Counted from the stretch's first letter, positions 62,201-64,000 are shown. The stretch: 64,000 nt of DNA from Iphione sp. A-MEVVRFRX5 (GCA_976226885.1 OZ320313.1:165726001-165790000), one strand, 5' to 3'. The notes: generated by a model not told the origin, from the sequence alone. A program made the numbers and translations.

Positions 62201-62746
62201 AGGCGATGGGACGGGATCGGGATGGCTGGATGGTGGATGGGGGGGGGGTTTCTTAGTGGGAGGGTCGGTTTGGAGCTTTAATTCATAGTATAATGACACC
62301 AGGACCCATCGAGGTAGAACGCATCTACGCCCAACTGCAACACTGAAGGACGTTTACCGGCCGTGGCTGAGAAGCAACCATGGCAACGATACAGATGTAA
62401 GTATTAACACTTCACAATTTGTGATCACCGTTTCTTTATTCGGTGGAGAGCCATCTTAGGGAGATATCTCCAATAGGGACATCCCTCTAATAGGGACACC
62501 CTTTTTTGAAGAACAGAATCATCTCTGTAGTATTAATATTGTTAGTGGAGGGAAGGCGAAAGGATTTCTCACATTTCATTGGGAGGTGTATATATATGTT
62601 CGTAGAGAGGTGGAAGATTTCTAAAGTTTCTACTCAAGGGGGTTCTGCAGAGGGAATCACCAGTTGCCTGAGGTACCTTTCTCACTAATAAACATCAAGT
62701 TCATTATTTGACCTGGTCTGCAGTTCTTCATGGCAAAGGCTAACAA

Positions 62747-62849
62747 GACCCCTGATGAAGGCAGTTTTTCGCCGAAACGTTGGGAATTGTAATAAAGCCG
62801 TCCTAAACCTGACCTCCTGTGTGGCGTTGGTGTGTTTTCTACACTTAGA
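62747..62849 (+). mobile_element. 103-bp Penelope-like pseudo-LTR / retrozyme-like insertion with 14-bp TSD
   Basis: Exact direct repeat GCAAAGGCTAACAA at 62733-62746 and 62850-62863; contains a hammerhead core followed by AATAAA (62791-62796); no poly(A) tail. Confidence 0.75.
62749..62784 (+). ncRNA. Minimal type I hammerhead ribozyme
   Basis: CCC-CTGATGA-A-GGC(AGTTTTTC)GCC-GAAA-C-GT-T-GGG. Stem I is CCC/GGG, stem II GGC/GCC, stem III a loopless palindrome (AACGTT). NUH site GUU; predicted cut 3' of 62781. Confidence 0.75.
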
Positions 62850-64000
62850 GCAAAGGCTAACAATATCGAAAACTATGCCCCGTAATGGTCCTCCTTTAAC
62901 CGACGACCTCATAACTGACAACACACCCTATCTGACACAGGAACTAAACACGAAAAATCAATTGAAAATATTTCCAAATCCAACAAATCTCATATATCTG
63001 ATGAGATCTTAAGGAAGCAAAATGTCCAAAAAGGGTGGACCACTGTATTAAAGTAAGTGTAAATATGTGCATCATGACAGAAGTTTCTTTATGGAATATG
63101 AGAAGTCCTTTCATATTTACGAGAGCCTCCTGTTAGAGTGGGTCTGGGCCATACATGGTAAGGGCAGCTTTCCTAAACGGTGTCAGCGAAGATTTCTGCA
63201 GGGGAGGGGTTAGATATAACCAGACTGACAATCTGTGTTTCTTTTTGAGCCAAAAAGAAAACTTCAATAGAGGCCGGCACAAAGACTATGATCGCAAGCA
63301 CCTATTAGTCTAGGTGATAGTTTTACTCACAAAATAAGCACAAAATATGTGTGTTCAAGTAGACATTCAAGCATAATATGCCACCATATTAGTAGGCCGT
63401 CCTGGAGATGCAGATCCACAGAAAATAGACACGCAGATCTCAGAGATAAGGATTATGGTATAGATATGTCATTTTTGCCTAACATTTATTGTTATTCTAT
63501 ATTTATTGTTATTCAATATTCGTGAGAAATGTGATAATCTTCTGTAGTTTGGTCGGTGTCACTTGCAAACTCATAAGTCGAAGCAACCAGTGCGAAAAGT
63601 GTTGATGGTTATAGCAAGTAGCCGTTCAAAAAAATATATCAATATCAAACTGAATTTACATTGATGATAAACGCAAACTTGTAGTTACATGACCTCTCAG
63701 GTGGTCTGAAAATATGCTGTATTAAAAGGTTGTAGACTGAAACCTCTTTACTACGAACAGCAAAGCGACTAACCCAAACCTATAAATAAAGAGGGGCATC
63801 CTTAATAACAGTATTTAAGTGGCATTTAAACATTATTATGAAGATTTGGTTCTATTTCCAGCCTGTACTTAATGTGGCATGTCCTTAATAGAGGGCAGAA
63901 GGTACCCTTAACCCTTTCATGGCATGTAGTGCATTGACGCATTCCCGTGGTCTGGGCAGGTAGTGTGTAATGCTTTAATGCATTATATTTAACGCATATA

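What the first reader, a model, noticed from the sequence alone, without database searches (positions are those of the whole stretch)
62733..62863. Solo 103-bp mobile unit consisting essentially of a hammerhead ribozyme, with a perfect 14-bp TSD
Seen: exact GCAAAGGCTAACAA repeats flank an insert that starts 5 nt before CTGATGA and keeps all core nucleotides, then AATAAA, with no poly(A). Host TSD bases ACAA could extend stem I by pairing with TTGT (62787-62790). Established: Penelope-like elements carry minimal type I hammerheads with palindromic stem III that need dimerisation, and retrozymes are non-coding hammerhead retroelements. Inference: a recent insertion of a truncated pLTR, or a very small non-autonomous ribozyme retroelement family that may be undescribed. 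A lone copy should cleave only in trans.
Basis: partly seen in the sequence, partly recalled or inferred. Interest (0 to 1): 0.8.

Follow-up and report, generated by a model that had tools for sequence, protein, structure and literature searches.

The report
Truncated Penelope retrotransposon tail with hammerhead
The 103-base insert is a dead, very short copy of the tail of a Penelope-type jumping gene that carries that family's usual small hammerhead ribozyme motif; this kind of remnant is already known, although here many such copies stop at the same base.

Summary
An exact 14-bp direct repeat (62733-62746, 62850-62863) flanks a 103-bp insert that carries every conserved core base of a minimal type I hammerhead, then AATAAA, and no poly(A).

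The insert is not a separate element. It is the last ~105 nt of the ~293-bp terminal repeat (pLTR) of a ~4.9-kb Penelope-like element (PLE) of this genome. The parent encodes reverse transcriptase and a GIY-YIG endonuclease in one frame. The 3' domain of the tail occurs about 100 times in the genome, never in short tandem arrays, so the insert is not a retrozyme.

One feature goes beyond ordinary 5' truncation. Of 40 sequenced copies, 20 start within 9 nt of the 5' edge of the hammerhead, most with their own target-site duplication (TSD). Four start within 0-3 nt of the predicted ribozyme cut site. None starts in the next ~65 nt upstream. These short copies come from several PLE subfamilies, which fits repeated by-products better than one self-propagating mini-family.

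My best reading is that reverse transcription began at the element's normal internal start site and ran to an RNA 5' end at the hammerhead edge. That last step is inferred. An untemplated G gives only weak support. No RNA data could be obtained.

The scan reached the same reading earlier for another PLE family (s1-334836). Interest is low to moderate.

The parts
62733..62746 (.). Upstream copy of the target-site duplication (GCAAAGGCTAACAA)
   Evidence: exact 14-mer, found only twice in the window, 0.04 expected by chance.
62747..62747 (+). Extra G at the 5' junction, found neither in the parent element (T there) nor in the TSD
   Evidence: G precedes ACCCC in 8 of 12 copies that start at this base (p=8e-4). 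Only 5 of these cannot be explained by the TSD (p=0.09).
62748..62785 (+). Minimal type I hammerhead motif. Helix I is CCC 62749-51 with GGG 62782-84. The core CUGAUGA is 62752-58, followed by an extra A at 62759. Helix II is GGC 62760-62 with GCC 62771-73. GAAA is 62774-77 and the palindromic C-G is 62778-79. U16.1 is 62780 and U17 is 62781.
   Evidence: One search gives the sequence. Searches show the core invariant or nearly so in 31 copies, with 92.7% of pair cells standard. The motif fits the PLE min-HHR features listed in PMC4209133. No Rfam hit.
62781..62782 (+). Predicted ribozyme cleavage site (after U17)
   Evidence: Inferred from hammerhead numbering. Four related copies (L048, L050, L058, L059) begin within 0-3 nt of the homologous site, each with its own TSD.
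62791..62835 (+). Most conserved part of the unit: AATAAA (62791-96) followed by a GU-rich stretch. It may be a poly(A) signal with its downstream element, or the RT recognition region.
   Evidence: this stretch is nearly invariant across subfamilies that differ elsewhere. The assigned function is inferred.
62832..62844 (+). Terminal hairpin: GTGT 62832-35 with ACAC 62841-44
   Evidence: helix 4 is 86.7% paired, and one search places it in the MFE structure. Other subfamilies keep a hairpin here in a different register. A stem-loop stands at the RT start site of the Anolis PLE (PMC11167929).
62845..62852 (+). 3' end of the element (TTAGAGCA), the site where the cDNA started. The last 3 nt overlap the TSD.
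   Evidence: most copies end ...AGCA. In full-length elements the pLTR-body boundary lies directly after GCA.
62850..62863 (.). Downstream copy of the target-site duplication

Best explanation
The insert is a dead retrocopy of only the last ~105 nt of a Penelope-like retrotransposon (PLE) of this genome. The element's endonuclease nicked an AT-rich target. Its reverse transcriptase started cDNA synthesis at the element's normal start site, directly after a terminal hairpin at ...AGCA, with 2-3 nt of microhomology to the nicked DNA. Synthesis ended about 105 nt later at the 5' edge of the hammerhead motif. Joining to the other target end left a 14-bp (11+3) duplication.

Shown: the homology to the PLE tail, the RT+GIY-YIG parent, the TSDs, and the pile-up of 5' ends at this boundary.

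Inferred, at about even odds: the boundary is the 5' end of a PLE transcript (a start site or processed end at A 62748). On this reading the unit is a 'leader-only' product comparable to an integrated strong-stop cDNA, and the extra G comes from copying a cap.

The hammerhead is the family's ordinary minimal type. It cannot form helix III alone, so this lone copy is most likely inert.
For: The genome holds at least 387 candidate copies of the unit, and the scored ones are 87-100% identical. The conserved 18-mer of the 3' domain occurs 104 times at up to 1 mismatch, against 3 for the control pattern.

Some unit copies form direct pairs 4.9 kb apart. They bound a 294-nt direct repeat and an ORF with RVT_1 (6e-9) and GIY-YIG (9.5e-5).

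The window unit aligns to the last 105 nt of that element.

Individual TSDs of 8-16 bp, and one of 73 bp, flank most short copies.

The 5' ends are as follows. Of 40 sequenced copies, 20 begin at positions 1-9 of the unit, 4 at the predicted cut site, and 1 at -61. None begins between -115 and -180. P is about 1e-12. Four more short copies known only by coordinates show the same boundary.

Short units occur in several subfamilies, next to long relatives of the same subfamily.

Published support: minimal hammerheads lie in PLE pLTRs and most occur singly as truncated PLEs (PMC4209133). In an Anolis PLE, reverse transcription starts internally at a stem-loop some 90 nt 3' of the hammerhead cut site (PMC11167929). 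In Drosophila virilis Penelope, the transcription start and an internal promoter lie inside the pLTR (PMC2377424).
Against: No RNA data were available. No sequencing run was listed, so the RNA 5' end is inferred from DNA copies only.

The extra-G signal is weak once cases explainable by the TSD are removed (p=0.09).

All 11 pLTR-body junctions found carry at least 50 nt upstream of the boundary. No copy starts at the boundary and continues into the element body. The RNA that gives full-length copies therefore starts further upstream, and a second RNA 5' end has to be assumed.

No long element with a tail more than 96% identical to the window unit was among the scored hits.

Confidence: 0.82

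Rival explanations
1. The unit belongs to a self-propagating, SINE-like mini-family. In this reading a ~105-bp unit carries its own internal promoter, starting at or next to A 62748, together with the RT recognition region, and it is copied in trans by PLE enzymes.
For: The size class and 5' end are discrete. The window copy and L001 are 100% identical, and no equally similar long parent was among the scored hits. L001-L004 all start GAC, so the G could be inherited. Drosophila virilis Penelope has an internal, downstream promoter in its pLTR (PMC2377424). A 2026 preprint (10.64898/2026.07.22.740005) argues that pLTR tails can found non-autonomous families.
Against: Short units occur in at least four PLE subfamilies, and each resembles the long copies of its own subfamily. 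L005 is 99% identical to the L062 tail, L013 resembles L010, and L029/L030 resemble L056. That pattern points to repeated birth rather than one lineage. The whole unit is PLE sequence and has no head of its own. In the Anolis PLE the RNA template needs about 55 nt beyond the RT start site (PMC11167929), which a solo unit lacks. No expression data exist.
Confidence: 0.1
2. The unit is an ordinary 5' truncation. The reverse transcriptase fell off or was blocked at the folded, protein-bound hammerhead on a longer RNA, and no RNA end lies at this position.
For: PLE insertions are mostly 5'-truncated (PMC8557442). The start points scatter over positions 1-9, and several junctions show A/T microhomology with the TSD. 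The four copies that start at TTGGGA fit a stall at the 3' side of helix I as well as they fit ribozyme cleavage. The PLE protein assists hammerhead folding in vitro (PMC11167929).
Against: A block should act before the hammerhead is copied, not after it. No strong structure is predicted just upstream of the boundary. There are no 5' ends in the AT-rich ~65 nt upstream, where microhomology would be easy. G is enriched at -1.
Confidence: 0.2
3. The unit is a monomer of an animal non-LTR retrozyme, which would spread through self-cleaved circular RNA.
For: It has a type I hammerhead, no coding capacity and a TSD longer than 4 bp. Retrozymes and PLE pLTRs are related (10.64898/2026.07.22.740005; PMC7229834).
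Against: No tandem arrays exist. The smallest spacing among the 100 listed copies is 4.2 kb, and no tandem repeat was found in L004. The hammerhead is the minimal PLE type, without loop 1 and without a helix III hairpin. The ends are not permuted: all copies share the PLE 3' end. At 103 nt the unit is shorter than the 170-400-nt retrozyme circles (PMC7229834).
Confidence: 0.02

Closest known systems
Minimal hammerheads in the pseudo-LTRs of Penelope-like elements (Cervera & De la Pena 2014, PMC4209133)
   Same: It has the type I topology and a full core. There is one extra nucleotide between A9 and G10.1, and the G10.1-C11.1 pair is present. Positions 15.2-16.2 are palindromic, with no helix III hairpin. 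It lies in the pLTR near the 3' end. Most genomic copies are single and belong to truncated PLEs.
   Different: Helix II is very short here (3-4 bp, against 6-8 bp in the Schistosoma and Drosophila examples), and helix I is only 3 bp. The paper does not report a fixed 5' boundary for the solo copies.
Poseidon PLE of Anolis carolinensis (PAc): internal initiation of reverse transcription (Frangieh et al. 2024, PMC11167929)
   Same: Inserted copies end a fixed distance 3' of the hammerhead cut site, just after a stem-loop (about 70 nt here, about 85-92 nt in PAc). The 3' end lies at the pLTR-body junction and carries no poly(A). Targets are AT-rich.
   Different: Many TSDs here begin with CA or GCA, the same bases that end the element. 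[quoted passage not shown] The PAc ORF starts inside the hammerhead, while here the frame opened by the AUG in CUGAUGA stops after 30 codons.
Animal non-LTR retrozymes (Cervera & de la Pena 2020, PMC7229834; Li et al. 2026 preprint 10.64898/2026.07.22.740005)
   Same: Both are non-coding, hammerhead-bearing sequences related to PLE pLTRs and probably mobilised by PLE enzymes.
   Different: Retrozymes are tandem repeats of 150-450 bp with canonical hammerheads and are expressed as circular RNA. This unit is solitary, 103-106 bp, carries a minimal hammerhead and has fixed, non-permuted ends.
Cap-derived extra G at the 5' end of full-length LINE-1 retrocopies, and retroviral minus-strand strong-stop DNA (from my own knowledge, not checked in a paper here)
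   Same: A cDNA runs from a fixed internal start site to the 5' end of the RNA, is about 100 nt long, and sometimes carries an untemplated G at the junction.
   Different: This is an analogy of mechanism only. Priming here is by nicked target DNA rather than by a tRNA, and the product is integrated as it stands.

Membership tests
Hammerhead ribozyme, minimal type I variant of PLEs | Conserved core: C3 U4 G5 A6 N7 G8 A9, G12 A13 A14, the A15.1-U16.1 pair, and H17 not G | tested here: met
   CUGAUGA at 62752-58, GAAA at 62774-77, U at 62780 and U17 at 62781. The core columns are invariant or at least 90% conserved in 31 copies.
Hammerhead ribozyme, minimal type I variant of PLEs | Features listed in PMC4209133: an extra nucleotide between 9 and 10.1, the G10.1-C11.1 pair, and palindromic positions 15.2-16.2 | tested here: met
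   The extra A is at 62759. G-C is present in 30 of 30 distinct rows. C-G is at 62778-79, and this CpG has changed to TG or CA in 10 of 31 copies.
Hammerhead ribozyme, minimal type I variant of PLEs | Helices I and II supported by compensatory base changes | tested here: inconclusive
   helix I is 94% paired and helix II 98% paired, but no pair changed on both sides, and the shuffles reach the observed values. The family is too uniform for this test.
Hammerhead ribozyme (Rfam covariance models) | Match to a curated hammerhead model | tested here: not met
   there is no hammerhead hit at the gathering score or at E<=10. The probable reason, which is my inference, is that these models expect a helix III hairpin, which minimal PLE motifs lack.
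Hammerhead ribozyme | Self-cleavage after H17 | not testable with these tools
   The only indirect hint is that four related copies start within 0-3 nt of the site. PLE minimal motifs cleave poorly in vitro, and only as dimers (PMC4209133).
Penelope-like element (fragment of one) | Parent with reverse transcriptase and GIY-YIG endonuclease in one ORF | tested here: met
   L062:4146-5834 (563 aa) has RVT_1 at 6.1e-9 and GIY-YIG at 9.5e-5, both above the Pfam cut-offs. The window insert itself encodes nothing.
Penelope-like element (fragment of one) | Pseudo-LTRs from partial tandem structure, with the hammerhead inside them | tested here: met
   a 294-nt direct repeat with 4913-bp spacing. The unit forms the last ~105 nt of each repeat.
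Penelope-like element (fragment of one) | The insert is collinear with the parent's 3' end and flanked by a TSD | tested here: met
   the window unit aligns to the last 105 nt of the reference element at 90-93% identity. Searches show the TSD.
Animal non-LTR retrozyme | Head-to-tail arrays (dimers to multimers) of 150-450-bp units | tested here: not met
   the closest pair among 100 listed copies is 4.2 kb apart; no tandem repeat in L004.
Animal non-LTR retrozyme | Expression as self-cleaved circular RNA | not testable with these tools
   no sequencing run was listed.
Independent non-autonomous (SINE-like) family | Own lineage of short masters, distinct from the autonomous partner except at the 3' end | tested here: not met
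   The whole unit is PLE tail sequence. Short copies occur in several subfamilies next to long copies of the same subfamily. A small residue of doubt remains because L001 and L002 have no equally similar long parent.

The most novel reading that the evidence does not exclude
The short copies may be a genomic record of PLE RNA ends. One class of about 105 nt would mark a capped or processed 5' end exactly at the 5' edge of hammerhead helix I. On that reading they are 'leader-only', strong-stop-like cDNAs made when the RT starts at the pLTR-body junction nearest the RNA's 5' end. A smaller class of about 70 nt, starting at the predicted cut site, would show that hammerhead-cleaved RNA is used as template in vivo. 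RNA-seq did not show this for the Anolis PLE (PMC11167929).
Probability: 0.35. Interest if true: 0.5.

Novelty: new member of a known kind. Interest (0 to 1): 0.28.

Why it matters
As an object, the insert is ordinary. Solo hammerhead-bearing remnants of truncated Penelope-like elements have been described since 2014.

What could interest specialists is the pattern across copies. The function of the hammerhead in PLEs and the RNA species used for retrotransposition are still open questions. Fixed 5' ends at the ribozyme's edge and at its cut site, each with its own TSD, would give indirect in vivo evidence on both. They can be checked cheaply by 5' RACE or CAGE in this species.

Tried and rejected
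- Rfam covariance models were run on the whole window at gathering score, on 62600-63000 at E<=10, and on the parent pLTR at E<=10. None gave a hammerhead or any other ribozyme hit.
- The covariation test on 31 copies was uninformative, with no compensatory changes.
- Thermodynamic folding of the monomer gave z=+1.08. Folding of a dimer of the ribozyme part favoured an alternative pairing of CUGAUG with CGUUGG, not the active fold. This says nothing either way.
- The sequencing-run search returned none listed, so read laying was not used and there is no evidence on expression, RNA ends or circles.
I did not try to read flanks by other means. I used coordinate-only searches instead.
- An empty-site paralogue could not be established. 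The flanks are themselves repeats, but no hit spanned both sides.
- I tested whether the AUG inside CUGAUGA opens the PLE ORF, as in the Anolis element. It does not: in the long copies the frame stops after 12-30 codons.
- I considered an intron acceptor at the boundary, as in D. virilis, and rejected it because no AG precedes the boundary in any subfamily.
- I considered a Pol III origin unlikely, because loop II holds a run of five T.
- L001 has no recognisable TSD. This remains unexplained.

Full report
**Observation.** GCAAAGGCTAACAA stands at 62733-62746 and again at 62850-62863. These are the only two copies in the window even at one mismatch, against 0.04 expected by chance. Between them lie 103 bp that begin GACCC, followed by:
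- CTGATGA at 62752-58 and one extra A at 62759;
- a small hairpin, GGC 62760-62 with GCC 62771-73;
- GAAA at 62774-77, CGTT at 62778-81 and GGGA at 62782-85;
- AATAAA at 62791-96.

There is no A-run at the end. The only CTGATGA...CGAAA motif in the window is this one.

**Is it a hammerhead?** No Rfam model reports one, at the gathering score or at E<=10. Read by hand, every core position of a type I hammerhead is present. The motif also has the features that Cervera and De la Pena list for the minimal hammerheads of Penelope-like elements (PMC4209133):
- one nucleotide between A9 and G10.1;
- a G10.1-C11.1 pair;
- a palindromic C-G at positions 15.2-16.2 instead of a helix III hairpin.

In 31 aligned copies the core columns are invariant or nearly so, and 92.7% of the pair cells are standard pairs. 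No pair shows a compensatory change, so covariation neither supports nor contradicts the fold. In a monomer, helix III would be one A-U pair closing two bases, which cannot form. The motif therefore needs a second copy, as published for this class. Nearest-neighbour folding prefers an inactive pairing and is not informative.

**What the insert belongs to.** The window's own genome holds at least 387 candidate copies of the 103-mer, and the scored ones are 87-100% identical. A conserved 18-mer from its 3' part occurs 104 times at up to one mismatch, against 3 for the control.

Many copies are preceded by a shared upstream sequence. Several pairs lie 4.9 kb apart on the same strand. In L061 these pairs bound a 294-nt direct repeat with 4913-bp spacing. 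Between the repeats of L062, one 563-aa frame carries RVT_1 (6.1e-9) and GIY-YIG (9.5e-5) (weaker pieces).

This is the defining layout of an endonuclease-bearing Penelope-like element with pseudo-LTRs. The window unit is the last ~105 nt of that pLTR. The pLTR-body boundary in the full-length copies falls directly after ...AGCA. Most solo copies end on the same bases.

**Insertion signatures.** Nearly all short copies have their own TSD of 8-16 bp, in AT-rich targets. L004 has one of 73 bp. Many TSDs begin with CA or GCA, the bases that also end the element. In the window, the GCA of the 14-mer can be assigned either to the element or to the target. I read this as 2-3 nt of microhomology between the nicked target and the RNA at the start of reverse transcription.

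The absence of poly(A) fits what was shown for the Anolis PLE. There, reverse transcription starts inside the RNA, at a stem-loop about 90 nt 3' of the hammerhead cut site, at the pLTR-ORF junction (PMC11167929). Here a hairpin (62832-35 with 62841-44) precedes the end. Other subfamilies keep a hairpin at this place in another register.

AATAAA followed by a GU-rich stretch looks like a poly(A) signal with its downstream element. If it is used, cleavage would fall upstream of the observed 3' end. In that case the template was not the polyadenylated mRNA. This is an inference.

**The 5' ends.** This part goes beyond a simple 'truncated PLE' verdict. I had 40 different copies in sequence.

| 5' end | Copies |
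|---|---|
| Positions 1-9 of the unit (12 of them at the A of ACCCC) | 20 |
| Within 0-3 nt of the predicted cut site GTT/GGGA (L048, L050, L058, L059, each with a 13-16-bp TSD) | 4 |
| 61 nt from the end | 1 |
| Between 115 and 180 nt from the end | 0 |
| Long copies | 15 |

In the sample drawn with a query from the 3' part only, which does not favour copies that keep the hammerhead, 16 of 23 copies shorter than 300 nt start in one 20-nt window. P is about 1e-12 under a uniform model.

Three further searches read by coordinates only gave four more short copies with the same boundary and none in between. The short copies belong to several subfamilies with different 3'-terminal sequences. Each resembles long copies of its own subfamily. 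For example, L005 is 99% identical to the L062 tail.

The base before ACCCC is G in 8 of 12 copies that start there, while long copies have T (p=8e-4). In three of them the G can be read as part of the TSD, and the strict count is not significant (p=0.09).

**Mechanism.** The part I consider settled is this: target-primed reverse transcription by PLE enzymes, from the normal 3' start site, gave a dead ~105-nt copy.

For the fixed 5' boundary I favour an RNA 5' end at or just before A 62748, at roughly even odds. It could be a transcription start or a processed end. The reasons are:
- the boundary is sharp;
- it lies after the folded ribozyme has been copied, not before it;
- no ends lie in the AT-rich sequence upstream, where microhomology would be easy;
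- an untemplated G sometimes appears at the junction;
- in Drosophila virilis Penelope the transcription start and an internal promoter lie inside the pLTR (PMC2377424), and the 5' edge of helix I coincides with an RNA landmark, the end of the intron (PMC4209133).

On this model the unit is a leader-only product. The RT starts at the pLTR-body junction nearest the 5' end of the RNA and runs off after ~105 nt.

One result counts against a simple version of the model. All 11 pLTR-body junctions found carry at least 50 nt upstream of the boundary. Three that I could read start about 272-295 nt from the pLTR end. No copy starts at the boundary and continues into the body. The RNA that yields full-length copies therefore starts further upstream, and a second, separate 5' end has to be assumed.

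The four copies that start at the cut site fit either use of ribozyme-cleaved RNA or a stall of the RT at helix I. Their scatter of 0-3 nt does not decide between the two.

**Rivals.**
- A self-propagating mini-family is not excluded. The window copy and L001 are identical, and no equally similar long element was among the scored hits. The spread over subfamilies speaks against it. So does the lack of any sequence of its own, and the published need for template sequence beyond the RT start site.
- A retrozyme reading fails on layout. There are no tandem arrays (smallest spacing 4.2 kb). The hammerhead is minimal rather than canonical, and the ends are fixed rather than permuted (PMC7229834).

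**Comparison with what is known, and novelty.** Solo minimal hammerheads that are truncated PLEs were described in 2014 (PMC4209133). A 2026 preprint derives animal retrozymes from PLE pLTRs and notes that most PLE insertions keep a single terminal repeat (10.64898/2026.07.22.740005). The object is therefore a new member of a known kind.

In the papers I could read, I did not find a description of a fixed 5' boundary of solo copies at the edge of the hammerhead, or of copies that start at the cut site. It is an unchecked AI note and I do not count it as evidence.

**Limits.**
- No RNA data were available.
- The organism is not known to me.
- The 145 N in the window were left untouched.

Noticed in passing
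L061:5760-6401 and L062:5824-6570 (between the GIY-YIG domain and the downstream pLTR): The parent PLE carries a further ORF after the RT-endonuclease frame, with weak C2H2 zinc-finger matches below the Pfam cut-offs. It makes the element about 4.9 kb long. Earlier scan notes (s1-351968, s1-364262) describe such a second zinc-finger gene in PLEs of this genome.
   Followed up: partly
L004:1430-1680 (minus strand): One solo unit is flanked by a 73-bp duplication with three mismatches, far longer than the usual 8-16 bp. Like the window's TSD, it begins with GCA.
   Followed up: partly
L048, L050, L058, L059 (5' junctions near locus position 1490): Four copies from different subfamilies begin within 0-3 nt of the predicted hammerhead cleavage site, each with a 13-16-bp TSD. 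This may be a trace of ribozyme-cleaved RNA used as template.
   Followed up: partly
window 62886-63049 and 62536-62746: The insert landed among other repeats. The stretch 62886-63049 belongs to an abundant ~165-bp repeat family, with many hits at 79-81% identity and 1679 candidates for the whole 701-bp query. The stretch 62536-62746 matches a copy on another contig at 78%, and that match ends exactly at the 5' junction.
   Followed up: no
L014 and L018, about 293 nt before the pLTR end; L062:7618: The upstream pLTRs of two independent full-length elements begin at the same run of T (TTTTTTTATAGA) with different host flanks. This is a second fixed 5' boundary. An earlier scan note (s1-320278) calls a leading T run a junction scar in this lineage.
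   Followed up: partly
G000:C4:23670322-23679848 and C4:22745922-22750648: These are complex PLE loci with direct and inverted tail copies about 4.4-4.8 kb apart, seen by coordinates only. The layout is the tandem/inverted arrangement described for PLEs.
   Followed up: no
alignment A1, columns 41-42 (window 62778-62779): The CpG that forms the palindromic centre of the minimal helix III has changed to TG or CA in 10 of 31 copies. The window's CpG observed/expected ratio is 0.62. Old copies therefore lose the dimerisation palindrome first.
   Followed up: partly
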